NCBI RefSeq assembly: GCF_006345805.1
Contig: NC_043015.1
Span: 13,578,001-13,642,000, forward strand
Source of the DNA: Octopus sinensis
Lineage: Eukaryota
Direction of reading: 5' to 3'
DNA length: 64,000 bases
The notes beneath the pieces were generated by a model. The model had not been told where the DNA came from. It was given only the letters and a program-made list of their open reading frames with translations, and made no database searches. The position numbers and the translations under genes are program-made. Positions 40,937-61,400 of this stretch are shown piece by piece; the first letter of the stretch is position 1, and each line of letters begins with the position of its first letter.

Positions 40937-41698
40937 TTTGTGACTTTGTAGAGACCGTGCAGTTGTTCACCATCCGAACTAACAACTGGGAAAAGAAGGC
41001 AAATATATTTATCATTAGTATTCCCTGGAGTTAAACATACAGAAAAGGAGCTGTTGCTGCAAATAGTCAGTTTTTCTCCTTCAACTTATATCAATAAGCT
41101 GGCTGAGAAAAATTACCCATCTTCGCTGTTTCAGGACCGACTTTGTGTCCAACGAATTAGTTCAAAAATGGAAACCTTGAAAAACCACGTCGACAAATAT
41201 ATATACAGAGTATTCTCCCTTAGTATGTGGGCCTGCATGATTTCTTGAAGAGTTATTTCCCTTTGACTACAAAAAACAAAAAAACAGTTGAAATGCCCGA
41301 GTTAAAAACTGGGGGAATTAACGGTAACATTACATTTATCTAACTTTAAGTAAATTATTGAAAAACACTCAGCGAACTTTCAGAATAAGTTCACTTAGTA
41401 GATATCTTCTTACTTTTTTAAAAAAGGTTTTTTTTTTTTTTATCAGATACCCAAATTTTAAACTTTACAGTTTCAGTTCTGTAAAAAGTTGTACACAAAT
41501 TCAATCCCCCAAATCCTTGTTAAATGTAATTTTACTCTAATCTGAAACTGTCCTCCTAATTGCTAACACCAACCCCCAACTTTAATTGCAAAGCCTTAGC
41601 CCTTAACTTAGACTCTAACTTGAAAACCTAACCCTAATCTTATTTCTGTTACCTACATACTGACCCCAACCTCAAGCCCAACGTGAGTTTATTTAAAT

Positions 41699-42082
41699 CA
41701 AGGGTTCTCGACCATTTTTTACCTACGAGCCGCTTTGATTACTATTCTATTCTGGTGGACCCCATAGCTGTTCAATATTTAAACACTAGTTTTATAGAAA
41801 TTTCTTTCAAATTTCCTATTCTGTTTTTCACACATTAACTTGTGTAGGTTGTGCTATGTAAAATGTTAGATAAAGAATCCAAACTGCTTCTTGCAATATA
41901 TACCAGTACATACATCTAAAGCAAAAATTTTTCAGAGACCCTTAAAATGCTATTGTGGATCCCCAGTTTACTATTTTGCTTATGTAGACCCCTATACCCC
42001 CCATACCCCCCACACCCCTACCCACTAAAAAAATATTGTATGAATCCCCAGGGGACATATGAACCCCAATTAAGAATCACTG
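41699..42082. mobile_element. hAT/Charlie-type MITE, copy 2
   Basis: Homologous to 14613-14923; flanks atttaaat / gtttaaag. Confidence 0.8.
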
Positions 42083-42675
42083 GTTTAAAGCATGTGCTTC
42101 TAGAAAGAAATCTTAAAATGAAAAGGTTACAGACAGGTACGCACTTTAAAAGCAAGTAGGGAAAGAAAATGAAACACAACTGAAATCCTGGAGGACTTTT
42201 TATTTGTAGAATTGTAATCTCAGGTGTTTAAAACATTGACATTCAAAGATATCTTCAAAGAAATATATAAAACATATGACAGCTATGTTGTGTGTTTATC
42301 CCAAACTTGCCAAACAGTAATAAAAGGGCACTAGACATTCCAAACTTGTAGTATTGCATCAACACATCAACACGGAACATCTAATTTCCTGTGAACAATA
42401 ATTGAGTATCTGCTCTTCAATTTGAGTCTATGAGGTGGCACCCCGGGAGATGCTAGACTGTTAAGAAACTTGTTGTTATAGTTTAGTTTCTTTTGGGTTT
42501 AAAATATAACCTACAGACTAATGTAAAATTTCAATTCTATGTAAAGTCAATTCACATTTTTACCCCAATCAATGTAAATGTGCATGTGTGTGTGTGTGTG
42601 TAAGTGTATGTATATATATATATATATGATACAGGTAAGATGATTTTTTTTAATGCAGAATTGTCGTTAGAACTT

Positions 42676-42804
42676 CAGAGAGACTGAGTAAATTACCCTT
42701 ACAAAGTGGAAAAATTTGTCAACAAATATCCATGGTACTCGGAGTTCATGGCTGTTTATTGACAAATTTTTCCACTTTGTAAGGGTAAATTACCCAGTAT
42801 TTCT
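42676..42804. repeat. Near-perfect ~125-bp fold-back (palindromic MITE or hairpin)
   Basis: 42693-42722 is the exact reverse complement of 42759-42788; pairing continues imperfectly inward and outward. Confidence 0.9.
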
Positions 42805-42818
42805 GCTGTTATAACAGC

Positions 42819-42862
<44 letters not shown>

Positions 42863-43428
42863 TGTATTTATATTAAGGTTACCTGATACTTCTCAGGTGA
42901 CAACCTATAAAATAGTTTTGCCATGCTACACACATTTTAGAATTTATTTGTAAGCTTCTCACTTCAGTTAGTGTTTATTTCAAGACAATATCTTTTATCA
43001 AACTATGTGACCCTCTACATCAAAACAAGAGCATCTTTTACTGTGTCTGATTCACATTCCTAATAACATTTTACAAAACAGCATGTACTACTATGTCTTA
43101 TATCATTCATGTTCAACTGGTGAAGCAATGAGAACCATTTAGTCATCCTGAAATGACTGATGAGTGGCACAGTGACTTTGTCTAAAGTGAAGAAGAGCTG
43201 TGCACCATCAAGCTCACTCTCTCATCCCTCATCATCAACCCCACTCTACATAAGCAAACCCTAATGTGTTACTTAACCCAAAACTGGGATCATGACATGT
43301 GCAACTACTCTGAGTCACAGAAAACCTGAGAACAACAGTGGCTAAGAGGTGATTCTGAACTCCTTAAAAACCCTGGAATTCACAAACCATGGCCTCACTG
43401 CCGGATACAGTTTAAAGCTGGCAGTGAA

Positions 43429-43658
43429 GACGGCGAGCTGGCAGAAACGTTAGCACGCCGGGCGAAATGTTTAGCGGTATTTCGTCTGTCTTTAGGTTCT
43501 GAGTTCAAATTCCGCCTTGGTCGACTTTGCTTTTCATCCTTTCGGGGTCGATAAATAAAGTACCAGTTACGCACTGGGGTCGATGTAATCGATTTAATCC
43601 CTTTGTCTGTCCTTGTTTGTCCCCTCTGTGTTTAGCCCCTCGTGGCTAATAAAGAAAT
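43429..43658 (+). mobile_element. SINE family B, full length, CpG-retaining
   Basis: gacggcgagctggcagaaacgttagcacgccgggcg... Confidence 0.92.
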
Positions 43659-43781
43659 ATATTTAGACACACAACTCTGAAGAATCACATACCTGGTATC
43701 TAAGTTAAAATTCTACATCTTCATTCTACTACCCCTACTACTCTCAGTTATGTTCCTCTGGTGAGATACTATAACTAAAAA

Positions 43782-44701
43782 CAGGCTGTCCCAGAATTAA
43801 CTATCTATTTCAGTGAGATTGGACGATTTTTTTTTTTAAACTCACTTTTATTTATGTTTATCATTTTTAATATGTGTTAAAAGTGTATAAAATTTTAATT
43901 TTGTTTATAATTTTATAATTTTTTTTCTTTTTGATAATTTTATTTTCATTCCTGTTGGATCCCACTTATTCTGTCCACAACAGCTTTTTTTTTAATTTGG
44001 CTGCAATAATTTCCTCTACTTCCATCCCCAGGATGGAGCAATAGTTTTGCTGAACTTAAAAAGAATGCATTCAATTAGCAGTACCGGAGATAATTCTTGA
44101 AATGCTTCAAAATGTGTTTCACACCCCTGAGGATAGATCTGAAATTTGCAGGGATACAGACGGAGCACATGTTGAAAACTTTTGATCAGCTTTGACATAA
44201 GATTTCTAAATCTATTTGTTTTGGTATCATAATTAAGTAATAATAAATCTCTGAACGAGATGTAAACAGTAACTGCACGACAATGTAAGGTATACTAGCC
44301 ATCTCAATATTGCTTGCATACAGTTTTTCGAAATCAGTGATGAAAGGTTACTGGAAAAACGATATATAAGGATTTGCAAACAGACTCCCTTCATCGAAAA
44401 CCGGTGATTGCCGTACGCCGAAGACAGGCAAATACCTAGAAACTGCAGTCCGTGCGTATCACTTAGGTTGACGAGAGAGGGATGACCTCCCTTTGCAAAT
44501 ACCATAAGGGCACAGAAAGTGTGCCTAAAGCCAGCTGGAGACAATGATCTACTGGGGCTACAAGCTACAGTAACACCCACCCTTAGTGGTTAGCCATATT
44601 GAGATGGCTAGTATACCTTACATAATTAAGTAATAAACATCAATTTTTTTTAAAACTTGCCCAATTTCATTGAAATAGATAATTAATTCTGGGACACCTT
44701 G
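43782..44701. mobile_element. Tc1/mariner deletion derivative with ~45-bp TIRs
   Basis: caggctgtcccagaattaactatctatttcagtgagattgg versus ccaatttcattgaaatagataattaattctgggacaccttg|ta; weak transposase-like remnant at 44016-44198 (-). Confidence 0.75.
44283..44623. mobile_element. 341-bp element with perfect 28-bp TIRs nested in the mariner derivative
   Basis: atgtaaggtatactagccatctcaatat (44283-44310) is the exact reverse complement of 44596-44623. Confidence 0.85.
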
Positions 44702-44862
44702 TATTATAAGGAAAATTTTGTAAAATTCTTGAAGCACGTGTCCATGGCTTTAAGCTAAGAATCATCACCTGAGAAAAGAACAACAACATCATCAATAATA
44801 AATAACAGCAGTAGTTATATATAAGCCTTCCTTTAAGGCATTCAAGTTTCAACAATACACAT

Positions 44863-45297
44863 AGGCGCAGGCGTGGTTGTGTGGTAAGAAGCCTGCTTCC
44901 CAACCACACGGTTAAGGTTCAGTCCCACTGCAAGGCACCTTGGGCAAGTGTCTTCTGCTATAGCCTCAGGCTTATCAAAGCCTTGTGAGTGGATTTGGTA
45001 GATAGGAACTGATAGAAGTCTGTCATATGTGTGTGTGTGTGTGCATGTATATGTATATGTATATATTTATGTGTGTGTTTGTGTGTGTCCCCCACTACCA
45101 CCACTATTGCTTGATAACCTATGGTGGTGTGTTTATATCCCTGTAACTTAGCAGTTTGGCAAAAGAGTCCAACAGAATAAGTAATAGGCTTGCAAAGAAT
45201 AAGTCCTGGGGTTGATTTCTTCAACTAAAAACCCTTTAAGGAGGTGCTCCAGCATGGGCACTGTCATATGACTGAAACAAATAGAAGAATAAAATAA
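44863..45297 (+). mobile_element. SINE family A, full length
   Basis: Head ggcgcaggcgtggttgtgtggtaagaag; typical tail. Confidence 0.9.
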
Positions 45298-45452
45298 AAA
45301 GAATATATTCACCATTAATTACAATAAACTTGTGCCTTTCATAACAGTCTTTTTTCTTGTAAGATATATCTCCAAATATAAAGTAAATCATTTTATCAGC
45401 TTTATAAAGGAGAAGAATTCTAGAAATATTTTCCTCATTGAACTTACCTGTA

Positions 45453-45690
45453 AACACACACACACACACACACACACACATGTGCCTGCACAGGTGTGTG
45501 CAACACACACACAAACACACACATGTACGCACACACACACACACTCACACACACACACAAACACACACATGTACGCACACACACACACACATGTGCCTGC
45601 ACAGGTGTGTGCAACACACACACAAACACACACATGTACGCACACACACACACACATGTGCCTGCACAGGTGTGTGCAACACACACACAA
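45453..45690. repeat. Tandem repeat of catgtgcctgcacaggtgtgtgcaac x3 in a (CA)n matrix
   Basis: Direct reading; units start near 45479, 45590 and 45656. Confidence 0.95.
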
Positions 45691-45837
45691 ACAAACAATA
45701 AATGGAAACATTTTTATCACTGTAAATCAATGAAAAAGCTATAAAGAAAATAATCTGACAAGTTCTGATTAGAAAAACATTTTTACTTTCTCAACAGAAT
45801 TGGTTTTAGTTTTGAAACTTAGGCATGTATCACATAC

Positions 45838-45843
45838 TTTATT
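45838..45843 (-). terminator. Candidate polyadenylation signal (AATAAA) of the minus-strand gene; alternative at 46016-46021
   Basis: Hexamer match 0.7-0.9 kb past the stop in AT-rich sequence; weak on its own. Confidence 0.3.
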
Positions 45844-46742
45844 ACATATTAGTGTTCAGTACCATTAACCAGTTCTCAACTAATTACAAAGATCACATTC
45901 CATAAAGCCAAATATTGTAAACTATTTACATTTCATGTGGTGTATTCATGTAACTCTAAAGCCTACATTCCAGAAGGCAGGTCTTTAATACTTTCTTTTG
46001 TATTATTGCAGTGTTTTATTCATTTGTCTATGAATGATACCAGCTGTTGCATTGGCGCCATGTTATGCAATACATGCTCAGCTGTTACCATATTATAATA
46101 GAGGCTGCAATTAAAACAGATGTGGAGATAAAGAATATGTTTTAAAAATGCTGTTTGCCTAATCTTGGCCAAATATTGTTCTGTTTTACAAGTAATGTTG
46201 AAATTATTTAGTTCTATTGGATTTCCAGATTACTTGCAGATCCTGCTGGAATTACAACTTTGTTAAATAGAATAATCTGATTGAAGATAAAGAAGGAATA
46301 GAAAGGAGAAAAAGATAAAGTCATTTTTTTTTTTTTAATCAGAAGAGAAAGATAGAAGTTGGAGGAGAGGCAGAGGAGGTTAAATGAATATGAACTGTAA
46401 CTTAGTAGTTGGAAGGAAATGTTGAAGAGAAATAAAGGATAAGTTGAAAATAAAAATAATTTTTTTACAATTTTTCTAAATAACTCAATTTTGTTTCTGC
46501 TGTTGAATTTTGTGTTAATTTTCCTGTGTAATAGTGAATAAATGTCCATATATATTGATAGTAGTTCAATAGTATTGATGATATTTTATGAAATATGATT
46601 TTATATTGTATATTGTCTCATACAATACTTTATGTAATATCAAAATGTAATAGACATAATATCACACATTAAATCATATCTTTTTTATGATACATAATTA
46701 TATAGAAAGTACAAATAAGAGATAAATAAGGACTGAAATATC

Positions 46743-48289
46743 CTATGAATTTATAGAAGTAGACGTATAGTAGTTAGTATCTGATTTGGGCCGAAGTTTT
46801 GAAGTTAATCTCCCAACAATAGTATTATTACCATTTTTTGTTCTTTTGGGTGGTTTACTTTCAGCTTGATTTTCATTAAATCTTGATTCCAGCTCCTTTG
46901 CTGTCCACTGCGTTCCTCGGTTATTGTCGACCACCCTAGTGGTTAAAAACTTTTCATAGGAATTCTTTGTGCGCATGAAATCATCATCATCTGTAAATAT
47001 TTCCTGCTTCTTCTGATAGCGGCTTTCAGGTTTTGCAGTGGTTGGCTTTACACTCATCTTCGTATCAGCATAGCTAAAATCCCTCAAATTGTGTCTCATT
47101 ATATTACCTTTTATTTTGGGGGCAGATTTGAACATTGCTTGAGCTGTTTTGGATTTTTTGGTCGGTTCCTTTTAATTTCTGTGTTAGCTTTCTGTGATTT
47201 AGGGCTTGAAGTCTGATACTGAATATTTTTGCGCCAAGTGTAACCATTTGTATCAACAAAGTCTTCCTCATCAGAAAGATATTTACCAAAATCTTCTCCT
47301 TCATAGTTCGTAAAGAGTTGCCGAGGAGAGTTTTCCTGTGAATCTGTGTTGCCAAAATCTTCATTCTTAAAGCTGAGAGTGGCTTCATCTTCATCATAAT
47401 CAGGGTCAGGAATGTAAATTTCTTCATAATCATTATCCATTAAGTTTGAGTTTAAAAGGTTCCTTCGAGAGAGGTAATCTGGTTCAACTGTTGCTGCAAC
47501 TGTCATCCGATTATTAGTCATCAATTTAGATTCCTTATTTAGGCCATCCATATTGTTATCATAAACTTTTAGATTTATAGACTCATAGAGTGACTTGTCT
47601 GTATGTTGTATAGTAGTCTTTTGGTCACTGTTTAGAGACAGAACACCTACATTTTGAGAAATCTCCCCAATTTGATCATCATTGCTCTGTAATGAATCCA
47701 AGACATCATGATATTCTGATGTTGAGGTGTCAGAAGGCTTTTCAAATAGTGTATGAGTTTCATAAAGAGGATTATCTCTTACTTTATGATCCAATGGTTC
47801 AGGATCAAAAGGAGTGGAATTATTTGTTTGATCTGATGAGTCATTGTTTGCTTTATTGGGTATTTTTTCCAAATCAGTGGGTTCATTTCCACCCATGAGC
47901 AAAAAACCATTTGTTGCCTCCATAGTATTACAATTAATTTCCGTATAATTATCTTTGTCATTAAAAGTGGTAACTTTTATTGGGGTCTTTTTAAATGTAG
48001 ATATTTTAAAAATTGAATTGATTGGTTTAACGTTTTTTGAAGTATCTTTATTTTTTACATTTTCTGGAGAAGAACTGTTGGGTTTAAACGATTTATTTTT
48101 CCACTTGAGCATCTTGACAAATTGGTTAATCTTAACAATTGGTTCAAAGTCTTGACAATTGGTTCAAAGTCACTGCAAGTTTTAGTGTCTGCAAGTGGCA
48201 GAATAAACTTTGATGCACTCTTTCTCACTTGAAGTATTCTCGTAGTTTGTATCAACAGCAATGGTTGACTGCTGTTTGTCAACAAACTC
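46743..48289 (-). CDS. Terminal coding exon (~500 aa) of an unidentified gene; low-complexity Asn/Asp/Lys/Thr-rich tail with Tyr motifs (NYEN, NPLYET, LYESI, YEEIYIPDPDYDE); interrupted as assembled
   Basis: Strong acceptor ctttctttttgtttctttcag|GAG at 48290; 333-aa ORF 48112-47111 in frame with the exon start; 130-aa ORF to TAG 46743 joined by one missing A at 47170-47173; stops at 48164-48184. No domain recognised. Confidence 0.75.
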
Positions 48290-48359
48290 CTGAAAGAAAC
48301 AAAAAGAAAGAGTGGTTAGTTATATTTTTGAAATTTTGAATAATAAAAGAATATTTACA

Positions 48360-48387
48360 TTATCATCCTCATCATCATTAACATCAC

Positions 48388-48425
<38 letters not shown>

Positions 48426-48464
48426 TATTATTATTATTATTATTAACATTATTATTATTATTAA

Positions 48465-48524
<60 letters not shown>

Positions 48525-48565
48525 CATTATTATTATCATCATCATCATCATCATTATTATTATTG
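48360..48565. repeat. (ATT)n/(CAT)n microsatellite followed by a SINE B copy (48575-48745, +)
   Basis: Direct reading. Confidence 0.92.
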
Positions 48566-49079
48566 AGACCAAGAGCTGGCAGAATTGTTAGGAAGCCAGG
48601 CAAAATGCTTCTGTTCTTATGTTCTGAGTTCAAATTCTGCCAAGGTCAACTTTACCTTTCATCCTTTCAGAGTTGATAAATTAAGTACCAGCGAAACACT
48701 GGGGTCAATGTAATCGACTAGTCTCCTCCCACAAAATTTCATCTTGCTTACGTTCTATGACGTCCTGTACCCATATGTGCATATGTATATACATATATAT
48801 GTAAGTAAGTACATATATGTATATATGCATATATATATATTATTTATATTATATATACATATCTATATATATATATATATATAAATAATATATATATACA
48901 TACATACATGCATATATGCACAAAAACATATATATATATATCACATGATCACGTGACCGACCAGGCTATCAGATGTTGCTACACATCGCTAGTCACAATG
49001 CACTTCGCATTGTTTTAGCCTTCAAATGACACCACCCTGCTGGCTAAGTGAGCAGGCCATATATATATATATATATATT

Positions 49080-49290
49080 GTTAATCCAAACAAGAAAACA
49101 CAAAAAAACAAAAATAACACAACAACGCGAGGACGTGGAACAAATAAAGTATTATTGGACGCTCAGGAAAGAACGGAAGAAGGAGGGTTTAACGTTTCGA
49201 GCGGAGCTCTTTGTCGGAAACATAGAAGAAGGAAAGATCCTGAGAAGGGAAGACGGAGGAAAAAAAATCGACAGCGGTACTCACGAGGTC
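49080..49290 (-). mobile_element. Penelope-derived short repeat with a mutated hammerhead motif (49187-49221)
   Basis: Minus strand gttt-CCGACAA-a-GAGC-tcc-GCTC-GAAAC-GT-T-aaac. Confidence 0.55.
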
Positions 49291-49304
49291 ACATACACAT
49301 ATAT

Positions 49305-49355
<51 letters not shown>

Positions 49356-49651
49356 CATATACATATATATATATACGGAAGGTGGAATATACGAGAATTT
49401 ATGCTCCTGAACCAGTTGTTGAGTGTCCCACCCAAGAGGAATTGATGCTAGATGTGTTGAAGCAGTTGTTGTGATCAATAAATTCTTGTATATTCCATCT
49501 TCTGTCTTTCATTTGCTACATACATATATAAACATATATACACACATTTTTATATACAATGGACTTCTTTCAGTTTCCATCTAGCAAATTAATTCTCATG
49601 GCTTTGAAACCATAATGTCTATGATATATGTATATATATAATGTATATAAA

Positions 49652-51557
49652 TAACTACAGAGGTATCAAGCTGTTGGATCAGGTGATGAAGGTTACGGAG
49701 AGGGTCATAGCCCAACTAATTAGAGAGAGAGTTAGTTTAGATGAGATGCAGTTTGGGTTTGTGCCAGGGAAAAGTACTACTGATGCTATATTCCTGGTAA
49801 GGCAGCTGCAGGAGAAATACCTAGCCAAAGATAAGCCCCTGTACCTGGCTTTTGTTGACATGGAGAAAGCCTTTGACAGGGTCCCCCGATCCCTTATCTG
49901 GTGGGCAATGAGGAAACTAGGGATAGATGATGGTTAGTGAGAGCTTGCGGGCCATGTATAGGGACGCTGCTAGTAGGGTGAGGGTTGGAAACAAGTACAG
50001 TGAAGAATTCCGGGTAGAGGTAGGGTGTCCACAAGGCTCAGTACTCAGCCCCCTCCTATTTATCATAGTCTTCCAGGCAATAACGGAGAATTCAAGACAG
50101 GATGCCCTTGGGAGCTCCTCTATGCTGATGACCTTGCTCTAATTGCTGAGTCACTATCAGAACTGGAGGAAAGTTTCAGGTGTGGAAACAAGGATTAGAA
50201 TCGAGGGCCTCAGTCAACTAGCTAAAACACAAGTCGTAATCAGTAGGAAGGTAGACAAATCACAAAACGCCTTCAGGTGATGGCCCTGCTCGATCTGTAG
50301 AAAAGGTGTAGGTAGAAACTCTATAAGATGCACCAAGTGTTAAGCTATGGACACATAAGAGGTGCAGCAATGTCAAAGGAAGGCTAACTAGGAAGATGGT
50401 TTTTTGTATGTGGCAGATGCTCAGGAACAATAAACACTGAAAATGCTCTGAGACCAACTTCCGTCACTTTCCAGGGAGAAAAACTAGAAATAGTTGATAG
50501 TTTCCGTTACCTAGGGACCAAGTCAGCAGCGGGGGCGGGGTGTGCTGAAAGTGTAACTGCTAGAGTAAGATAGCTTGGGCAAAGTTCAGAGAGCTCTTAC
50601 CTCTGCTGGTGACAAGGCCTCTCGCACAGAGTGAAAGGCAGACTGTATGATGCGTGTGTACGAACAGCCATGCTACATGGCAGTGAAACATGGGCCATGA
50701 CTGCTGAGGATATGCGTAAGCTCGCAAGAAATGAAGCCAGTATGCTCCGATGGATGTTAATGTCAGTACTCATACTCGGCAGAGTGTAAGTACCTTGAGA
50801 GAAAAGCTTGACCTAAGAAGCATCAGTTGTGGTGTGCAAGAGAGACGTTTGCGCTGGTATGGTCATGTGGCGAGAATGGATGAAGATAGTTGTGTGAAAA
50901 AGTGCCACACCCTAGCGGTTGAGGAACCTGTGAGAGGCAGACCCAGGAAAACCTGGGACGAGGTGGTGAAGCACGACCTTCGAACTTTAGGTTTCACTGA
51001 GGAAATGACTAGAGACCGAGTCCTCTGGAAGTAGCTGTGAGCGCGAGAAGACCCGGCAGGACAAGTGAGTCCATAACCCATGGCCTCTACATGGGATGGA
51101 GCCAGCCTAGTATGCATACCTTCCCTTCTTGGGACACAAAACTCTACTTGTGAAGACCTGTTGAGGCAAGTGAGGATCAGAATCGAAATCGATCATGGAA
51201 TTGCAGATGTGTTACCAGTGCCGTGGCATGTAAGAGAACCTTCCGTTTCGCGACCGTTGCCAGCACCGCCCTGTTTCGTGTCCGTTGCCAGCCTCGCCTG
51301 GCCCTCGTGCCGGTGGCACATAAAAAGCACCATCCGTTCGTGGCCGTTTGCCAGCTCTGTCTGGCTCCTGTGCGGGTGGCACGTAAAAAGCACCCACTAC
51401 ACTCACGGAGTTTTGGCGTTAGGAAGGGCATCCAGCCGTAGAACACTGCCAGATTTGACTGGGCCTGATGAAGCCTTCTGGCTTCACAGACCCAGTAGAA
51501 CCGTCCAATCCATGCTAGCATGGAAAACGGACGCTAACGATGATGATGATGATGATG
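49652..51557 (+). mobile_element. RTE-clade LINE, 5'-truncated: RT plus 3' UTR plus (GAT)n tail
   Basis: NYRGIKLL..QFGFVPGKSTTDAIF..QEKY..FVDMEKAFDRVP; QGSVLSPLLF; LLYADDL; RLRWYGHVARM; GRPRKTW; many 1-bp deletions. Confidence 0.95.
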
Positions 51558-52244
51558 AACTATCTATGTATGTCTGTCCATGTTTGTGTTTGTCCACCAC
51601 CATCATTTGACAATCGATGTTGGTTTGTTTATAATCCCAACTTAGCAGTTCAACAAAAGAGAATGATAGAATAAGTTCTGGGCTTGGAAAAGAAAAATAG
51701 CAATGGGGGTTGATCTTTTCAATTAAACCCTTCAAGGCAGTACCCCAGTATGGCCATAGTCCAAAGACTTGAATGAGTAAGAAATAAATGACAATGACAA
51801 TCATGATTGTGTCAGCAGTGGTGGTCGAGGATGGAGGAGGTAATGTTGGGGTGGAATACTTGAAGAAGATAACTGTTGAGAGCAATGAAAACCTCATTTG
51901 TAAAAATTGAGACCACGAGAAGCCAATATTGGAACCTCTATGTGGCCACTCCACAAGCAAAAATAACCAAATCTCCCTCAAACCACACCCTATTATCTTA
52001 ATATTAGTTTGAAATTTTGGCACTAGGCCAGCAGTTTCAGTGGCGGGTTAAGTCAATTATATTGTCTCCAATGCTCAGCTGGTACTTATTTTATCAACCG
52101 CCAAAAAATGACAGGCAAAGTTGACCTCAGCAGAATTTGAACTCAGAATGTGAAGATGGATGAAATGTTGCTAAGCATCTTGCCTAATGTCCTAATGATT
52201 CTGCTGGCATTGCCACCTTACTACTATCTTAATATTAGGACAGA

Positions 52245-52830
52245 TTAAGGCAGCAAGCTGGCAGAATAGTTAGTATGCTAACTGTAGGAGTGGCTGTGTG
52301 GTAAGTTGCTTGCTTACAAACCACATGGTTCCAGGTTCAGTTCCACTGTGTGGCATCTTGGGCAAGTGTCTTCTACTATAGCCTCAGGCCGACCAAAGCC
52401 TTGTGAGTGGATTTGGTAGACGGAAACTGAAAGAAGCCCATCATATATATGTATATATACATATATATATGTGTGTGTATGTTTGTGTGTCTGTGTTTGT
52501 CCCCCCAACATTGCTTGACAACCGACGCTGGTGTGTTTACATCCCCGTAACTTAGCAGTTCGGCAAAAGAGACTGATAGAATAAGTACCAGGTTTACAAA
52601 GAATAAGTCCTGGGGTCGATTTGCTTGACTAAAGGTGGTGCTCCAGCATGGCCACAGTCAAATGACTGAAACAAGTAAAAGAGTAAAAAGAGTATGCTGG
52701 GCAAAAGACTTAGCAGTATTTCATCCAACTTCACGTTCTGAGTTCAAATTTCACTGAGGTCAGCTTTACCCTTCAACCTTTCAGGGTCGATAAAATAAGA
52801 ACCAGGTGAGTACTAAGGTCAATATAATCA
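52245..52830 (+). mobile_element. SINE A (52280-52695) nested in SINE B
   Basis: B head interrupted and then resumed; agtatgct duplicated at both junctions. Confidence 0.8.
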
Positions 52831-52932
52831 ACTTATATATGCATTTGATTTGCTGATAAAATTTGAAATCAATATTAGGGCAGATTTGATGTTGTGTCCC
52901 AAGGTACACTGGGTCAGGAAAGGAATAAAAAA

Positions 52933-53165
52933 AGAGCACTAGACTGGTCAATGATAACAGAGGAACATAGTTATCATTGACCAGTCTTGTGCTCTGAGGA
53001 ACTGAGGAACACAGTGGACAGTAAATGGGCTGGAAACTAGAGTTAATGAATGCCAAGCTGAAAGTAAACCACCCAAAAAAACAAAAAAATGGTAATAATG
53101 CTATTGTTGGGAGGTTAACTTCAAAACTTTCACCTAAATCAGACGCTTGTAGAATATTCATAACT
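52933..53165 (+). pseudogene. Inverted partial copy of the 3' end of the terminal coding exon (46750-46950)
   Basis: Encodes PKKQKNGNNAIVGRLTSKLSPKSD versus exon PKRTKNGNNTIVGRLTSKLRPKSD; ~19 differences in ~137 aligned nt by hand. Confidence 0.92.
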
Positions 53166-53767
53166 GGAATGACTTTTATGGCAAATTGGTCATTCAGAGT
53201 AGTTCAGTTGCTAAGCAACAACTGTGATAATGACAATGATAGTCAGAAAAATAATTATTCTCTATCAAGCACAAAGCTTGAAATTTTTAGCAGGTAGGGA
53301 TTGATTAATTACGTTGACCCCATTGCTCAACTGGTAATTACTCTATCGACCCCTAAGGGATGAAAGGCAAAGTCAGTCTTGGTGAATTTTCAATTCTGAA
53401 CAGAATGAGCTGCAAGAAATGCTGTTATGTATTTTATACAATGTACTAATGATTCTGCCATCTCACATCCTTTATTATCAGGGAAATAATAGCAATGATT
53501 TAATGATGGTTCTAACCAGTATAGAGACAATGACAGTCTTAGTGATTACAATAAGGTTAATGGTCATAGTGACATCACTAATGAAGTGCTGATAATGATG
53601 CTGGTAGTAATAATGGTTTCACATTTTGGCACAAGGACAGCAAGTTCGGAGAAGGACATAAGTCAATTAGATTGACCCCAGTGTTCAACTGGTACTTATT
53701 TTACCAACCCCAAAAGGATGAAAGGTAAAGTCAGTATTGGTGGTATTTAAACTCAGAATGTAAAGAG

Positions 53768-54683
53768 AGAGTGGCTGTGTGATAAGTAGGTTGCTTACCA
53801 ACTACATGGTTCCAGGTTCAGTCCCATTACGTGGCACCTTGGGCAAGTGTCTTCTACTATAGCCTCAGGCTGACCAAAGCCTTGTGAGTGGATTTGGTAG
53901 ACAGAAACTGAAAGAAGCCCATCGTATATGTGTGTGTGTGTGTGTGTGTCTGTTTTTGTCCCACCCCACAACATCGCTTGACAACCAATGCTGGTGTGTT
54001 TATGTCCCCGTAACTTAGTGGTTCGGCAAAAGAGACTGATAGAATAAGTGCTGGGCTTACAAAGGATAAGTCCTGGGGTTGATTTGCTTGACTAAAGGTG
54101 GTGCTCCAGCATGGCCACAGTCAAATGACTGAAACAAGTAAAAGAGTAAAAGAGAGATGGAATGCCACTAAGCATTTTCCCCAGTGTGCTAATGATTCTG
54201 CCAGCTCACTGCCTTATACGATGGCTGTAATAATAGCATTGGTTTCAAATTTTGGCAGAAGGCCAACAATTTCAGTGGAGGGGTTAAGTTGATTACATCG
54301 ATCCCAGTTTTCAACTGATATTTATTTTATCAATCCCTGAAGGGTGAAAGGAAAATTCAACCTCAGCGGAATTTGTAAAAACGATTCTAGCAATAACAAT
54401 GTGGTATGGGTAATAGACATGTAATTAAGAAGTTTGATTACACTACTTAGTATCTTGGCCAAGCATTGCCTATAGGCAATATTTTACATAGGTGCAGGCA
54501 TGGTTGTGTGGTAAGAAGCTTGCTTCCCAACGAGATGGTTCAGAGGTTCAGTCCCACTGTGTGGCATCTTTTGGGCTAGTGTCTTCTACTATAGCTTCAG
54601 GCTAACCAAAGCCTTCTGAGTGGATTTGGAATTGGGAGACATAAACTGAAGGAAACCTGTCATGTGTGTGTGTATATATAAAC

Positions 54684-54723
<40 letters not shown>

Positions 54724-55365
54724 GGGGGGTGGAGGGGGAGAGAGAAAGAGAGAGGACTGTGTTTGTCCTCCACTATCACTTGACCATTGGTATTGGTGGA
54801 TTAACATCCTGGTAACTTAGCGATTCAGTAACAGAGTCTGATAGAATAATAAACAGGCTTTAAAAAATTCAAAAATAAGTACTGGGGTTGATTCATTCAA
54901 CTAAAAATTCTTTAAAGCAGCACCCCAGCATGGCTGCAGTCTAATGACTGGAAAAAGTCAAAGATGAAAGATAAAATATGCACAGGAGTGGCTGTGTGGT
55001 AAGTAGCTTGCTTACCAACCACATGGTTCTGGTTTCAGTCCCACTGCGTGGCACCTTAGGCAAGTGTCTTCTATTATAGCCTCAAGCTGACCAAAGCCTT
55101 GTGAGTGGATTTGGTAGACAGAAACTAAAAGAAGCCTGTCGTATATATGTATACATATATGTGTGTGTGTTCGTGTTTGTCTCCCCAACATTGCTTGACA
55201 ACCGATGCTGGTGTTTTTATGTCCCTGTAATTTAGCAGTTCGGCAAAAGAGACCAATAGAATAAGTACTAGGCTTACAAAGAATAAGTCCTGGGGTTGAT
55301 TTGCTCGATTAAAGGCGGTGCTCCAGCATGGCCACAGTCAAATGACTGAAACAAGTAGAAGAGTA
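53768..55365 (+). mobile_element. Cluster of SINE A copies (53768-54153, 54488-54960, 54980-55365) interleaved with SINE B variants
   Basis: Repeated heads and tails; CpG sites mostly converted to TpG/CpA. Confidence 0.9.
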
Positions 55366-55745
55366 TGCATGCCCTCCCTGTCATCAATACTCACTTGTTT
55401 TTTGAGTAAGAAATCTCTTCCATTTATTTAACCTCCCTTCACAAGTGCAGAACAACTACAGGACATATTGTTCACGGAAAATGTAAAAATGACATCACTG
55501 TTATGCTCAATTATGACATATGAAAACAAGTGGAATGTAATCATTCATGAATGCTTACACATATATGCAATTATGCACACATGTCTGCACGTATACATAT
55601 GTATATCACATACCCACCCACACACACATATATAAATATACATATACATAAAGACACACATAGATATATATGCACACTCACACACATACATATGCCATAG
55701 GTGCATGGTTAAGAAGCCTGCTTTGCAACTGCATGGTTTCAAATT

Positions 55746-55801
55746 CAGATGCAATTTTATGTGTGTGTGTATGTATACACACACACATAAAATTGCATCT
55801 G
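55746..55801. repeat. Perfect palindrome (27-bp arms, 2-nt centre) truncating a SINE A head
   Basis: cagatgcaattttatgtgtgtgtgtat-gt-atacacacacacataaaattgcatctg. Confidence 0.95.
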
Positions 55802-55807
55802 TTCCTG

Positions 55808-55981
55808 TACGATAAGAAATAAATGAAATACTTATATCCACCCAGAATAGTTCACACATGTGCTGAGGCTGGCTAAAGGATTTTACATTTAGATATAACT
55901 GGGTACTTGTGAGTACTCGTGACTCTTGCTTATGCTTTTTTCCATGGGTGCGTATAAGTATTTCATTTATTTCTTATCGTA
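55808..55981. mobile_element. 174-bp TA-flanked MITE with perfect 29-bp terminal inverted repeats
   Basis: tacgataagaaataaatgaaatacttata is the reverse complement of 55953-55981. Confidence 0.85.
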
Positions 55982-56334
55982 TTTTCTACTGAAGAGGGAA
56001 GAATCCATAGGATTAATTCTGAAATTGATTCAATATAGAAATAACGAACTTTAAAAAAAAATTCTATTGGCTAGCTTTCCTCGATTTCAGCACATGTATT
56101 TATAGTGAATGCATAATGAAATGTAGAAACTGACGATTTAAAGTCTGTTATCAGCATATTGGCATAGAAATAAAGTTTCTTTTGCCCTTGTTTATAAGTT
56201 ATTTATAATTTTAACTTTTAAAGGTATTTTAATATGCTGCCACTTTTGATGAAATTTTTTTCTGAAAAAATTTTATCCTATATTAGTAGTAGTAGTACAT
56301 ATATATATATATACACACACATAGGAGGGAGATC

Positions 56335-56735
56335 AAGGCACAGGCATAGTTGTGTGTTTAACAAGTTTGCTTCCCAATCACATGGTGCCAGTTTCAGTCC
56401 CAATGCTTGGTATCTCAGGCAAGTGTCTTCTACTATAGCCTCAGGCTAACCAAAGCTTTATGAGTAGATTTAGTAGACAGAAACTGCAAGAAGTCTGTCA
56501 TGTGTGTATGTGTGTGTGTGTGTCCTTCAGTCTGTGTTTGTCCCTCCAACATCACTTGACACCCGATGCTGGTGTGTTTACGTATCCGTAACTTAGCAGT
56601 TCAGCAAAGGAGACCAATCGAATAAGTACTAGGCTTACAAAGAATAATTCCTGGGTCAATTTGCTCAACTAAAGGCGGTGCTCCACCATTGCTACATTCA
56701 AATGACTGAAACAAGTAAAAGAGTAAAAGAGTGTA
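56335..56735 (+). mobile_element. SINE family A
   Basis: Full head-to-tail copy; further plus-strand copies at 51583-51770, 58410-58590, 59240-59690, 59740-59900. Confidence 0.9.
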
Positions 56736-57982
56736 TGATTAAGAGCCCCCATGTAGATTATGATTATCGTGTCAGCTTCCTGAATGGTGATTAGTCTAAT
56801 TCTGTACTTAACAATATTACCTGTTATGATATACAGAGCATAAGTAGTGGAATTTAAGATAAATGCCAGTATAAATATTCAATTCATACATATGTTTCCC
56901 CACTGCATTTATTTAGAACACAGTGTTAGATGTTCCAAGTGCATTTAGATGTGTCTGTGTGTACGTGTGTGTGTGTGTGTGTGTGTGTTGTGTGTGTGTG
57001 TGTGTGTGTGTTCATGTGTGTGTGTGTGTGTGTGTTAGTGTGTGTGTTGCCATGTCTTGACATTAGAGTATAGTTACAAGCAAGTGTGCTCTTCATATAT
57101 GTAATAGAGTCCCTCATTTCCAGTCTTCCATGAAAACATGTCCCTCCACAAAGAAATGTTACCCTGCTTGGAAACAAGTGACAGGAAGGGCATCCAACCA
57201 TAGAAAATCTACCTCAACAAATTCAGTCTGATCCATGCAAGCATGAAAAAGTGGAAGTTAAAATGATGACAACAGTAGTGGTGGTGGTGGTGGTGGTGGT
57301 GGTGGTGAGGAGGAGGAGGTATAGAAGGAAGAGGGAGATCAAGGCTTACAGTTTTAAGATTGAGGGCTTAAAGCATATGGTCCTTTTTTTTCAAGATGGT
57401 AGAGAATTTGTTGAGACAATTTCTAATGCTGGGTTTATGAAATATTTCTGTGTGATATCATAATATTTTGAACTAAATAATGACCAACATAGATTAATAT
57501 TTCAAAGTCACTGAGTTGAATAACAAAGATTATGAACCCTTTTAGTGGTAATCAATGACCAACAAATTTTAGAACTCAAACAAGTGCTAACCAATAAGCA
57601 ATATGAAATAACATCTTTGCATAGAACTAGAGAAATGACTAGGTTTAGTAACTCTGACTTGTAAAAGCAAATGATTAACACAGGCTTAACACTTTAACTA
57701 GTAATACTAACAAGTAATACTAACTAGAACTGAGCTATTATACAGTAGTTTATGCTATGTAACATACTTGTTTGTGAATATAAAAAAAAAAAATTAGTCA
57801 CTTGCTAGATGTGAATAGAACATTTTTCTGAAAAGAAGTAGCATAAAAACGATATCAAAATAGCAATTTATAATGAATAAAGCATTCAAATTTGATATAA
57901 AAGGCTGAGAAAACATATGACAATACATGTTACAGCTTACAATGATTCATAACTAAAGGTCTGATGTGTATAGTTTCTTTGA

Positions 57983-58345
57983 GGAGGCGCAATGGCCCAG
58001 TGGTTAGGACAGCGGACTCGCGGTCGTAGGATCGCGGTTTCGATTCCCAGACCGGGCGTTGTGAGTGTTTATTGAGCAAAAACACCTAAAGCTCCACGAG
58101 GCTCCGGCAGGAATGGTGGTGATCCCTGCTGTACTCTTTCACCACAACTCTCTCTCACTCTTACTTCCTGTTTCTGTTGTACCTGTATTTCAAAGGGCCG
58201 GCCTTGTCACTCTCTGTGTCATGCTGAATATCCCCAAGAACTACGTTAAGGGTACACGTGTCTGTGGAGTGCTCAGCCACTTACACGTTAATTTCACGAG
58301 CAGGCTCAACCGGAACCCTCATCGTCGTAACCGACGGAGTACTTC
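57983..58345 (+). mobile_element. tRNA-derived SINE (family C variant)
   Basis: Homologous to 15581-15962. Confidence 0.9.
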
Positions 58346-58600
58346 CATCCATAGTTTCTTTGAAACATTCACTGTCAAAAGATCTGAGTTTATTATAAAA
58401 ACTTTGCAGATATGACTGTGTGGTTACGAAGCTTGCCTTCCAACCATATGGTCTTGAATTTAGTCCCACTGAGTAGCACTTTGTAGCACAATCCCACTGT
58501 GTAGCAAGTATTTTTTACTTGCCTCAGGGCTGACCAAAGTTTTGTGAATGGATTTGGTAGACAGAAGCTGAAAGAAACCCATTGTGTATGTATATATATA

Positions 58601-59225
58601 CTAGCTGTTGCACCCTACATTGCTCATGTTTTCCATGTTGAAGTTAAGTCCACTTCTGACCATTGAAATTTTACACGTGATTACAGTTCATGTCAATTAG
58701 TTGATGCCAGCTCTGGAATTAATTAAAACCTTTACTGTCTCCCCTACCACAAAATTTACCTAAATCTCAAATTTCATTAAAATTGAATAAAAAATATAAA
58801 AGTTATGGCCAAAAATAAAATCCCTATGGGTATTTGCTTGCAAAAAGCCTATTGATTTTATAAAACCACTGCCCAGGCGTAATTATCGATTTTTTGTCAA
58901 TGCCATATACTGACATCAACTCACTGCCATGAGCCTCACTCACTCATTGATTTTCATCAAAATCAGACAAAAAATGCAAAAGTTGTAGGAAAAATAACAT
59001 CGTTATGGGAATTTCCATTCAAATGCCCTATTGAGCTCACAAAAATCGATGCCAACTGAGCCTTATCGAGTTTTCGAAAAATTTCTGGTCTTATTTGAAC
59101 TTCAGGGTATGGGATCTACCTATGCGCCAAAAATCATTAAAATCGGTTGGACAGTGTGGGAGGCGTTAGAGTAACCCCAAACACACACACACACAGACAG
59201 AGACCATTACACATTTATGTATATA
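58601..59225 (-). mobile_element. Short non-autonomous Helitron-like element
   Basis: 3' end ...CAGCTAG|T at 58601, similar to the 3758 end; 5' end with (TA)n/gtctgtgtg leader; internal degenerate tandem repeats. Confidence 0.55.
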
Positions 59226-59691
59226 TATATATACATATATGTGCAGGCGTGAGTTTGTAGGTATAGGCATAGGAATGGCTTTATAGGTACAGGCATCACT
59301 TTATAAGAAGCTTGCTTCCAACTATATAGTTCTGGGTTCAGTCCCACTGCGTGGCACCTTGGGCAAGTGTTTTCTACTGTAACCTCAGGCCAACCAAAGC
59401 CTCGTGAGTGGATTTGGTAGACAGAAACTGAAAGAAGCCTGTTGTATGTATATGTAGACATCTATATGTGTGTGTCTTTGTATCTGTGTTTGTCCCCCAT
59501 CACCATTTGACAACTGGTGTTGGTGTGTTAATGCTACCGTAACTTAGTAGTTCAGCAAAAGAGACTGATAGAATAAGTACAAGGCTTAAAATATAAGTCT
59601 TGGGGTCGATTTCTTCAACTAAAACCCCACAGGGCAGTGCTCCATCATGGCCATAATCAAATGACTGAAACAAGTAAAAGAATAAAAGAAA

Positions 59692-59727
<36 letters not shown>

Positions 59728-60289
59728 GTATGTGAAGGTGTGTGTCCAAGTGTGTGCCTTTGTGCTTATGTTTGTCTGCCACCACTGCTTAACAACTAGT
59801 GTTGGTTTGTTTACATCCCTGTAACTTGGCAGTATGGCAAAAAAAAATGATGGAATAGGTACCAAGTTTTGAAAAATTAGTACTGGGTTCAATCTGTTCA
59901 ACTAAGTGAAACTAGTAAAAGAAAAAATAAAGATATAATAAAATAAGTTAGTTTACAAGAGGAAGAGAAGATACTTGATGTTTCAGGTAGAACCACTTCA
60001 TCATACTTATCATTTACCAATGTTAGTTTCAAAACTAGCTTCATTGGATTCTACTGTTTTCCTAAGTTTATTACAGAATTAACAAATACATGGATTTAAA
60101 TAATTCTATTGTTATGTTACTGGCTTTCCAAATACAGTACCAGGCAGTGACTCACATGGCTTCTGATTTTAACTGATTGGAAGTGTTATTATGTACATGA
60201 TTTTGTCTTGGTGTAAAAGATGGGCTATAGCAAATATTCTGCTAAGCATCTTGCCCTAGCATGCTAACGATTCTGCCAGCTTGCCATCC

Positions 60290-60379
<90 letters not shown>

Positions 60380-60410
60380 TGATTGATAACAATAATAATG
60401 ATGATGATGG

Positions 60411-60480
<70 letters not shown>
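60290..60480. repeat. (AAT)n-(GAT)n-(AAT)n microsatellite
   Basis: Direct reading. Confidence 0.97.
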
Positions 60481-60482
<2 letters not shown>

Positions 60483-61012: not shown

Positions 61013-61400
61013 TAATAATAATAATAATAATAAGGATAATGATAATAATGCCTGAAAGTAACTTAAATACCATAAAGCACAAAAATTAAAACCGTGATAT
61101 ATTGTCATCACTGTTGCAGTCGTCATCATCATCATCATCAACATCATCATCATCATTGTCGTCATCATCATTGTCGTCATCATCATCATTATCAATGAAA
61201 CATGAAAACAATTTTTTAGGTTTTCATTTACATGAGATGGAGGTAAGCACTGTAGCTAGGTTGGATTAATCCCCACACACATATCCCTTTGCACCTGCCA
61301 TTGTTCGTATTGTTGTCTTATGTACCTAAAGGCAATTGCTAACACTTTTTTAAGTTGATTAACATAAGATAAATACCCATGTGTTCAGAGCAAGACTTAC

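What the first reader, a model, noticed from the sequence alone, without database searches (positions are those of the whole stretch)
46750..53165. Intronic inverted copy of the gene's own last coding exon: possible long-range editing-complementary sequence
Seen: 52935-53165 (+) is a reverse-orientation copy of the final ~200 nt of the minus-strand terminal exon (46750-46950), ~85% identical over ~137 nt by hand alignment. It is not a TE. Inference: the exon has a splice acceptor, no exon is visible in 48.3-53.2 kb, and CpG depletion plus SINE strand bias extend to 64 kb. So the copy probably lies in the preceding intron and could fold back on the coding exon in the pre-mRNA as a long imperfect duplex with a ~6-kb loop. 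Established: ADARs edit such exon-intron duplexes, and coleoid cephalopods recode mRNA heavily by A-to-I editing. An editing partner made by inverted duplication of the exon itself would be a neat route to new recoding clusters. It may equally be a neutral relic.
Basis: partly seen in the sequence, partly recalled or inferred. Interest (0 to 1): 0.72.

Follow-up and report, generated by a model that had tools for sequence, protein, structure and literature searches.

The report
Inverted exon-fragment copy upstream of octopus gene
A 210-base stretch about 5 kb upstream of an octopus gene is an old, inverted, decaying copy of the end of that gene's coding sequence; it could pair with the exon in the RNA and attract editing enzymes, but its evolution looks neutral and no editing could be tested.

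Summary
Window 53000-53143 (+) is an inverted copy of 46780-46922 (125/143 identical, one indel, E 6e-44). A 25-nt extension and a quasi-palindromic insertion make the whole copy 52934-53143. The window is Octopus sinensis. The same copy sits at the same place in the independent O. vulgaris assembly, so it is not an artefact. It was not found in O. bimaculoides or Argonauta.

The "terminal exon" actually holds the entire 455-aa CDS of a mollusc-wide uncharacterised gene. An intronic position for the copy is plausible but unproven. Support comes from a positionally conserved acceptor, a CpG-depleted domain from 41 to beyond 64 kb, and a 10:1 SINE orientation bias. If both arms are in one transcript, they are predicted to form about 133 bp of duplex.

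Nothing suggests selection for pairing:
- The copy keeps ancestral states that the exon has since lost.
- It carries about 8% private substitutions, at or above the neutral rate.
- None of the exon's 5-8 later changes is compensated.
- Only 6 of 17 transitions are wobble-compatible.
- O. sinensis and O. vulgaris differ in the copy as much as in its flanks.

Best reading: a neutral relic of a small inverted duplication that may be an incidental ADAR substrate. Editing is untested.

The parts
46780..46922 (-). Main exon arm. It codes residues NRGTQWTAKELESRFNENQAESKPPKRTKNGNNTIVGRLTSKLRPKS, the most conserved C-terminal motif of the protein.
   Evidence: 87% to the copy. (conserved motif; 63 adenosines, of which 57 face U and 4 face C).
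46923..46944 (-). Extension of the parent segment. It matches the 5' piece of the copy (52934-52955).
53000..53143 (+). Main arm of the inverted copy, sense-like on the + strand. On the minus-strand transcript it reads antisense to the exon.
   Evidence: Present in O. vulgaris L005.
52934..52995 (.). Quasi-palindrome at the 5' end of the copy. Exon-derived 25 nt, an 11-nt loop, then an inverted re-copy form a 25-bp hairpin. This is probably a template-switch mutation. It is shared by O. sinensis and O. vulgaris.
   Evidence: dG -41.6 kcal/mol, z -11.5.
46743..48112 (-). Complete CDS (ATG at 48112, TAG at 46745-46743) of a mollusc-wide uncharacterised protein, all in a single coding exon. In this assembly it is broken by a 1-nt homopolymer deletion at 47150-47151.
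48289..48293 (-). Candidate 3' splice site (polypyrimidine tract, then CAG|G). The exon would start at 48289, giving a 177-nt 5' UTR part.
   Evidence: the position is conserved in O. sinensis, O. vulgaris, O. bimaculoides, the Logan species and Argonauta.
49641..50142 (+). LINE reverse-transcriptase fragment in the interval between the arms, antisense to the gene.
   Evidence: RVT_1, E 8e-12 and 1.7e-5.
41000..64000 (.). CpG-depleted domain (o/e 0.2-0.5, against 0.8-0.95 at 35-41 kb) that contains both arms. Read here as a germline-methylated gene body.
   Evidence: PMC9476566.

Best explanation
A 165-nt piece of the 3' part of the gene's only coding exon was duplicated at the DNA level, in inverted orientation, about 6 kb away and 4.9 kb upstream of the start codon. 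This happened at or before the split of the O. bimaculoides and O. vulgaris/O. sinensis lineages. The copy then acquired a 43-nt quasi-palindromic internal duplication and one or two 1-nt indels, and it has drifted at the neutral rate. It survives in O. vulgaris and O. sinensis and was not found in O. bimaculoides. It is a relic without a selected function.

It probably lies in a 5'-UTR intron (inferred, about 0.6). If so, it is transcribed on the same pre-mRNA as an antisense-like segment. There it can zip up with the exon into an imperfect duplex of about 133 bp across a 6-kb loop. ADAR would then be expected to edit that duplex as a by-product, much as it edits inverted Alu pairs.

Shown: the copy, its extent, its phylogenetic distribution, its neutral-looking substitution pattern and its pairing potential in silico. 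Inferred: its intronic position and its origin by template switching. Untested: duplex formation in vivo and editing.
For: - Reality and extent of the copy.
- Independent assembly (O. vulgaris).
- Age: at 5 unambiguous sites (up to 8 with the ambiguous ones) the O. sinensis/O. vulgaris exon has a derived base, and the copy keeps the ancestral base seen in O. bimaculoides and/or the Logan species. The copy has TGC (as in the Logan species) where O. sinensis and O. bimaculoides share AAT. It shares 4 derived states with O. sinensis plus O. bimaculoides against the Logan species plus Argonauta. In the NJ bootstrap the two exons group to the exclusion of the copy in 73% of replicates. A copy + O. 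sinensis-exon clade is not among the listed clades, the least frequent of which has 7%.
- Neutral decay: 13 private substitutions in 165 nt (7.9%). O. sinensis-O. bimaculoides non-coding divergence is 9-12%, or about 5-6% per lineage.
- No compensation of the exon's own changes. Of 17 transitions only 6 are G.U-compatible and 11 give A.C or C.A mismatches (site table; the wobble tally from it was done by hand).
- The copy's reading frame is broken by a 1-nt insertion.
- O. sinensis vs O. vulgaris: 2 substitutions in the copy against 2.5 expected from the 1.2% flank divergence, P = 0.53.
- The copy and its unique flanks are absent from the O. bimaculoides interval bounded by probable orthologous anchors, with no gap between those anchors. 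They are also absent from Argonauta.
- Pairing potential.
- Intronic position.
Against: - The power to detect constraint is low. The copy is only 165-210 nt and the sister species differ by just 1.2%.
- A long duplex tolerates many mismatches, so neutral-looking drift does not exclude use as an editing partner.
- Retention for longer than the O. bimaculoides split in a region of heavy TE turnover could hint at some constraint.
- The O. bimaculoides assembly has N gaps (171 and 580 nt) in the upstream 10 kb, and the orthology of the anchors rests on repeat-family members. Absence there is likely but not certain.
- The long-branch copy may be drawn towards the base of the NJ tree.
- No transcript or RNA-seq evidence of any kind was available.
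Confidence: 0.68

Rival explanations
1. Selected long-range editing-complementary sequence. The copy lies in the 5'-UTR intron, pairs with the end of the CDS in the pre-mRNA, and is maintained because ADAR recoding of the conserved C-terminal motif is useful in the O. vulgaris/O. sinensis lineage.
For: - A duplex of about 133 bp with ddG about -128 kcal/mol is predicted.
- The exon arm has 63 adenosines; 41 would recode if edited, and 4 face a C, a context ADAR favours.
- Indirect evidence puts the copy in the transcribed gene body.
- Exon-intron stems are the usual editing substrates in other animals (PMC6724681).
- The copy has persisted since about the O. bimaculoides split.
Against: - There is no compensatory evolution and no excess of wobble-compatible changes.
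- The private substitution rate is at or above neutral.
- The copy is no better conserved than its flanks between sister species.
- It was not found in O. bimaculoides or Argonauta, although the protein motif is invariant there.
- The partner lies in the upstream intron and the paired site is about 1.4 kb inside the exon. The intron could therefore be spliced out before the exon arm is made (inference).
- Much cephalopod editing is thought to use exonic structure (my own knowledge).
Confidence: 0.1
2. The copy lies outside the gene's transcript, either upstream intergenic DNA or a different transcription unit. In that case no exon-copy duplex ever forms in cis and the copy is pure DNA debris.
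For: - The whole CDS is in one exon, so no upstream coding exon is needed.
- No upstream exon or transcript was identified.
- The 2-kb Logan contigs are colinear with the genome across the putative acceptor. If they are RNA-derived, this would mean an unspliced transcript or one that starts nearby.
Against: - The acceptor is conserved in position out to Argonauta.
- O. bimaculoides has two, and Haliotis four, mRNA isoforms encoding one identical protein, which implies splicing in the UTRs.
- CpG depletion continues at least 16 kb upstream.
- The SINE-like family shows a 10:1 orientation bias, and the LINE fragment is antisense to the gene.
- No other gene is annotated within 10 kb in four assemblies.
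Confidence: 0.3
3. Small-RNA source. The 25-bp exon-derived hairpin (52934-52995), or the long exon-copy duplex, is diced into siRNA- or miRNA-like RNAs that repress the parent gene. This follows the model in which hairpin-RNA and new microRNA genes arise by inverted duplication of their targets.
For: - The hairpin is near-perfect and stable (dG -41.6, z -11.5).
- It is made of sequence derived from the gene's CDS.
- It is shared by two species.
Against: - The hairpin arm differs from the present exon at about 6 of 23 positions.
- The stem is shorter than a typical animal pri-miRNA (my own knowledge).
- No small-RNA data were available.
- It was not found in O. bimaculoides.
Confidence: 0.04
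4. Assembly artefact or member of a dispersed repeat family.
For: The genome-wide copy number could not be checked with these tools.
Against: - The arms differ by 13%, which is not what a mis-assembled duplicate looks like.
- The same copy with the same flanks is in an independent O. vulgaris assembly.
- It is the only such match in 64 kb, and related loci each have only the gene's own copy.
Confidence: 0.02

Closest known systems
Intronic editing-complementary sequences of ADAR targets (GRIA2 Q/R and R/G sites; insect Syt1; exon-intron stems in general)
   Same: An intronic stretch complementary to a coding exon could form the dsRNA that ADAR needs. Exon-intron stems are described as frequent editing substrates (PMC6724681, PMC5705066).
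   Different: - Classical ECSs are short and usually lie in the adjacent downstream intron within about 1 kb.
- They are conserved, with covariation.
- Here the partner is 143 nt long, 6 kb away in the upstream (5'-UTR) intron, lineage-restricted and drifting neutrally.
- Editing has not been shown.
Inverted Alu/SINE pairs and editing inducer elements (long intronic hairpins, e.g. Gabra3)
   Same: A long imperfect duplex built from inverted duplicated sequence in one pre-mRNA. Such duplexes are edited promiscuously and mostly non-adaptively. Distant intronic duplexes can raise editing elsewhere (PMC5654063).
   Different: One arm here is a unique coding exon rather than a second repeat copy. 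Editing would therefore hit codons directly.
Hairpin-RNA and young microRNA genes born by inverted duplication of target-gene sequence (plant MIR genes, Allen et al. 2004; Drosophila hpRNAs; my own knowledge)
   Same: Both originate from an inverted duplicate of part of a protein-coding gene that can fold against sequence of that gene.
   Different: In those loci the two arms are both duplicates, lie adjacent, and act in trans through small RNAs. Here the main partner is the founder exon itself, in cis, with a 6-kb loop, and no small RNAs are known.
Gene-fragment micro-duplications and quasi-palindrome template-switch mutations (replication-based rearrangements; my own knowledge)
   Same: A short, non-TE, non-retroposed inverted fragment with a junctional quasi-palindrome. 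There is no poly(A), no 3' UTR and no sign of TE termini.
   Different: None that matters. This is what the DNA-level event most resembles. The exact mechanism was not reconstructed.

Membership tests
ADAR editing-complementary sequence (ECS) | Lies in the same primary transcript as the edited exon | tested here: inconclusive
   Only indirect support: the conserved acceptor, same-protein mRNA isoforms, the CpG-depleted domain from 41 to beyond 64 kb and the SINE orientation bias. No transcript data were available.
ADAR editing-complementary sequence (ECS) | Base-pairs with the exon into an extended dsRNA | tested here: met
   In silico only: 133 intermolecular bp (81 AU, 47 GC, 5 GU). Duplexfold gives -206 kcal/mol, against -65 +/- 7 for shuffles.
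ADAR editing-complementary sequence (ECS) | A-to-I editing of the paired exon that depends on the partner | not testable with these tools
   No RNA-seq was accessible. The Logan contigs of another species differ by ordinary SNPs in both directions, including one C/T.
ADAR editing-complementary sequence (ECS) | Conservation and covariation of the partner with the exon | tested here: not met
   The copy was not found in O. bimaculoides or Argonauta. None of the 5-8 exon changes is compensated. Only 6 of 17 transitions are wobble-compatible. Private divergence is 7.9%, at or above neutral. Constraint is at flank level between sister species.
Processed pseudogene / retrocopy fragment | Includes the mRNA 3' end with poly(A), often with target-site duplications | tested here: not met
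   Homology stops 37 nt before the stop codon. There is no 3' UTR and no poly(A).
Transposable element / dispersed repeat | Multiple dispersed copies | tested here: inconclusive
   It is single-copy in the 64-kb window and in the 21-kb related loci. Genome-wide copy number is not testable here.
hpRNA / inverted-duplication small-RNA locus | Inverted duplicate of target-gene sequence forming a compact hairpin | tested here: inconclusive
   An exon-derived 25-bp hairpin exists, but the main arms are 6 kb apart. The hairpin arm differs from the present exon at about 6 of 23 positions.
hpRNA / inverted-duplication small-RNA locus | Produces small RNAs that target the parent gene | not testable with these tools
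   No small-RNA data were available.
Assembly duplication artefact | Absent from independent assemblies or reads | tested here: not met
   The copy is present with identical flanks in O. vulgaris GCA_951406725.2.

The most novel reading that the evidence does not exclude
The inverted copy is co-transcribed in the 5'-UTR intron. On its own it creates a lineage-specific cluster of A-to-I sites in the last ~48 paired codons of the gene in O. vulgaris and O. sinensis, a cluster that O. bimaculoides (which appears to lack the copy) does not have. That would be a documented case of an editing partner born by inverted duplication of the edited exon itself, whether or not the recoding is adaptive.
Probability: 0.2. 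Interest if true: 0.65.

Novelty: new member of a known kind. Interest (0 to 1): 0.33.

Why it matters
How the tens of thousands of cephalopod recoding sites acquire their dsRNA partners is poorly understood.

This locus offers a clean natural comparison. Two species carry a 143-nt exon-complementary segment upstream of an otherwise conserved single-exon CDS, and a third appears not to. Public matched DNA/RNA-seq from these species could show directly whether a newly made exon-intron inverted repeat is enough to create a recoding cluster.

If no editing is found, the locus is only one more small, neutrally decaying segmental duplication. The present evidence favours that ordinary outcome.

Tried and rejected
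- **Pfam on the exon ORFs and the copy ORF:** no domain. The NCBI name "homeobox protein 4-like" is not supported.
- **Word-index protein search with the C-terminal 130 aa:** it returned nothing, not even the known orthologues. It therefore says nothing about paralogues. The full HMMER search found only distant mollusc homologues and no octopus paralogue that could have donated the copy.
- **Logan contigs L002 and L006 as possible transcripts:** they are colinear with the genome across the acceptor and differ by 5 transitions in both directions, including one C/T. This is uninformative about splicing or editing. The run accession was not found in the literature.
- **Exact look-ups of the two ORFs overlapping the copy:** neither is on record, so there is no independent read-level or transcript support from that route.
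- **Locating exon 1 by conservation:** the whole 57.0-59.6 kb upstream block is 94-99% identical to O. bimaculoides and is partly repeat-derived. No exon stands out.
- **Orthologous empty site in O. bimaculoides:** the unique flanks of the copy have no counterpart there. Deletion in O. bimaculoides cannot be told apart from later arrival of an older copy in O. vulgaris/O. sinensis.
- **Retrocopy origin:** rejected, because there is no 3' end and no poly(A).
- **Literature searches:** none found an ECS made by inverted exon duplication.
- **Technical limit:** L003, L005 and L006 were not exported to the script environment, so they were analysed through the alignment and pattern tools.

Full report
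**Observation**

The repeat finder reports two adjoining inverted pairs: 46834-46922/53000-53088 (87%) and 46780-46850/53073-53143 (86%). A local alignment joins them into 143/144 nt with 125 identities and one 1-nt indel. blastn of 46000-48400 against the whole window gives E = 6e-44. It finds no other match apart from microsatellites.

Reading the sequence and re-aligning after removing an internal insertion shows that the copy starts at 52934.
- Positions 52934-52958 match exon 46944-46920.
- The next 12 exon bases follow.
- Then comes an inverted re-copy of the first piece.
- Homology then resumes at 53000.

The result is a 25-bp hairpin at 52934-52995 (dG -41.6 kcal/mol, z -11.5). Homology ends at 53143, which is 37 nt short of the stop codon. 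Neither the 3' UTR nor a poly(A) tract is copied. So the parent segment is 46780-46944 (165 nt) and the copy is 52934-53143 (210 nt).

**What the gene is**

The 333-aa ORF at 47111-48112 has three close relatives:
- O. bimaculoides XP_014773718/9, 455 aa, named "homeobox protein 4-like".
- A Logan-assembled octopod protein, 453 aa.
- An Argonauta hians protein, 461 aa.

An exact look-up places the window in O. sinensis GCA_006345805.1, chromosome CM016877.1. Cluster members include the 456-aa O. vulgaris protein CAI9736536.1.

In O. bimaculoides, O. vulgaris and Argonauta the gene range equals the CDS length, so the entire CDS is one exon. In the window the CDS runs from ATG 48112 to TAG 46743.

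There is no Pfam domain. A full HMMER search finds 32 relatives at 30-40% identity, among them bivalve and gastropod proteins. The gene is therefore a mollusc-wide uncharacterised gene and its NCBI name is a misnomer.

The O. sinensis CDS is split into two frames by a CC-for-CCC difference at 47150-47151 relative to O. vulgaris. This is most simply a homopolymer assembly error.

The exon arm encodes the most conserved C-terminal motif of the protein, KNGNNT.VGRLTSKLRPKSD, which is invariant out to Argonauta.

**Distribution of the copy**

A degenerate 32-mer and an exact 20-mer from the arm hit twice in the O. sinensis and O. vulgaris loci. One hit is the gene and the other is an opposite-strand copy 4.6-4.9 kb upstream of the ATG. 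They hit only once, or not at all, in the O. bimaculoides, Logan-species and Argonauta loci.

The O. vulgaris copy has the same flanks and the same hairpin. It is therefore orthologous, and an assembly artefact is excluded.

In O. bimaculoides the window's copy matches only the gene's own 3' end. Syntenic anchors at window 56.3-59.6 kb correspond to L001 3.2 kb-1, so they bracket the interval. The best one-to-one anchors are 52289-52688 with 8871-8470 at 90%, and 55056-55787 with 8189-7313. They leave only about 280 gap-free bases where O. sinensis has 2.4 kb that includes the copy. The copy's unique flanks have no counterpart there.

Caveat: L001 has N runs at 6759-6929 and 8893-9472, and the anchors are members of repeat families. 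Absence is probable, not proven.

**Age and mode of evolution**

This analysis covers 165 aligned sites.
- The copy carries none of the 5 unambiguous (up to 8) substitutions specific to the O. sinensis/O. vulgaris exon.
- It has TGC, as in the Logan species, where O. sinensis and O. bimaculoides share AAT.
- It shares four derived states with O. sinensis plus O. bimaculoides against the Logan species plus Argonauta.
- In the NJ bootstrap the two exons group without the copy in 73% of replicates. A copy + O. sinensis-exon clade does not appear among the listed clades, the least frequent of which has 7%.

The duplication therefore dates to about the O. bimaculoides/O. vulgaris split or earlier. 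This implies either later loss in O. bimaculoides or relocation of an older copy.

The copy has 13 private substitutions (7.9%) plus indels. O. sinensis-O. bimaculoides non-coding divergence is 9-12%, or about 5-6% per lineage. The copy has therefore changed at least as fast as neutral DNA.

Of the 25 exon-copy differences, 17 are transitions. On the minus-strand RNA only 6 of these would give G.U pairs, while 11 give A.C or C.A mismatches. I tallied this by hand from the site table.

The copy's reading frame is broken.

Between O. sinensis and O. vulgaris the copy has 2 substitutions and 1 indel in 212 nt. From the 1.2% flank divergence, 2.5 substitutions are expected (P = 0.53).

None of these tests shows constraint on pairing, although their power is limited.

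**Is the copy in the transcript?**

Evidence for:
- A polypyrimidine tract followed by CAG|G, 177 nt upstream of the ATG, is conserved in position in all five species. Similarity to Argonauta fades upstream of it.
- O. bimaculoides has two, and Haliotis four, mRNA isoforms encoding one identical protein. With a single coding exon, this implies splicing in the UTRs.
- CpG o/e is 0.8-0.95 at 35-41 kb and 0.13-0.58 in every 2-kb window from 41 kb to the end of the window.
- In O. bimaculoides, methylated CpGs cluster on the gene bodies of expressed genes and are virtually absent from TEs and intergenic DNA (PMC9476566). The depleted domain is therefore best read as a transcribed gene body that includes both arms.
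- One SINE-like family is 10 plus to 1 minus in 46-64 kb, against 3:3 elsewhere. A second family shows no bias.
- The LINE RT fragment at 49641-50142 is also antisense to the gene.
- No other gene is annotated within 10 kb in four assemblies.

Evidence against: only that no upstream exon or transcript could be identified.

I put the intronic position at about 0.6.

**Pairing potential**

I co-folded the minus-strand versions of 52930-53165 and 46740-46960.
- The result is 133 intermolecular base pairs: 81 AU, 47 GC and 5 GU.
- The total energy is -239 kcal/mol, against -111.5 for the two pieces folded alone.
- Duplexfold gives -206, against -65 +/- 7 for shuffled partners.
- The exon arm holds 63 adenosines, of which 57 face U and 4 face C: 46894 E>G, 46870 N>S, 46823 T>A and 46809 (synonymous).
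- 41 of the 63 would recode if edited.

One kinetic reservation is an inference. The partner is in the upstream intron, and the paired site lies about 1.4 kb past the acceptor. Splicing could therefore remove the partner before the exon arm is transcribed.

**Comparison with known systems**

Functionally, the arrangement would work like an intronic ECS or an inverted-repeat ADAR substrate (PMC6724681, PMC5654063, PMC5705066). It meets the pairing criterion in silico. It fails the conservation and covariation criterion. The two decisive criteria, co-transcription and editing, could not be tested.

By origin it resembles the inverted-duplication route known for hairpin-RNA and young microRNA genes (my own knowledge). 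The difference is that the founder exon itself is one arm.

Literature searches found no described ECS made in this way.

**Verdict**

The feature is real and independently confirmed. It is best explained as an old, neutrally decaying inverted micro-duplication of part of the single coding exon. It probably sits in the 5'-UTR intron, where it could act as an incidental ADAR substrate.

The functional idea is neither supported nor excluded.

Interest is modest (0.33). It rests mainly on the ready-made comparison between species with and without the copy.

Noticed in passing
window 47150-47151: The O. sinensis CDS has CC where O. vulgaris has CCC. This shifts the frame and truncates the annotated protein to 333 aa. 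The orthologues in O. vulgaris, O. bimaculoides, the Logan species and Argonauta are intact at 453-461 aa. It is probably a homopolymer error of the long-read assembly.
   Followed up: partly
window 48120-48170: A 26-nt tandem duplication (CCAATTGTCAAGACTTTGAA-like unit) lies in the 5' UTR part of the exon. It is present in O. sinensis and O. vulgaris only.
   Followed up: no
window 52934-52995: A near-perfect 25-bp hairpin built from exon-derived sequence and its inverted re-copy (dG -41.6 kcal/mol, z -11.5). It looks like a template-switch quasi-palindrome. Whether it yields small RNAs is unknown.
   Followed up: partly
window about 41000: A sharp CpG o/e boundary: 0.8-0.95 below 41 kb and 0.13-0.58 from 41 kb to 64 kb. 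This is about 5.7 kb beyond the stop codon, which suggests a long 3' UTR or read-through, or a larger transcription unit.
   Followed up: partly
window 46000-64000: A roughly 400-nt SINE-like family (for example 52289-52688) is oriented 10 plus to 1 minus in this region, against 3:3 in the rest of the window. A second, roughly 130-nt SINE family (for example 48610-48738) shows no bias.
   Followed up: partly
window 57000-59576: This block is 94-99% identical to O. bimaculoides over long stretches, well above the 88-91% of the 3' flank, although it is partly repeat-like. It could hold regulatory elements or the missing 5' exon.
   Followed up: partly
window 49641-50142 (+): A degenerate LINE reverse-transcriptase fragment (RVT_1) lies between the two arms, antisense to the gene. 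CpG o/e is locally higher there (about 0.5).
   Followed up: yes
L001 6759-6929, 8893-9472, 13492-21368: The O. bimaculoides locus has runs of N, including two in the 10 kb upstream of the gene. These limit any statement that a sequence is absent there.
   Followed up: yes
L002 / L006 (Logan runs SRR11869394 and SRR11869384): Identical 2016-nt contigs from several runs of an unidentified octopod differ at 5 transitions, one of which gives S/N at residue 244. They look like SNPs between individuals. The species and library type are unknown.
   Followed up: partly
window 4103-4576 (-), 16839-17252 (-), 32463-32882 (+): By eye these ORFs look TE-derived: Helitron-like, mariner/Tc1 transposase-like and retroelement-like. 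None was checked against a library.
   Followed up: no
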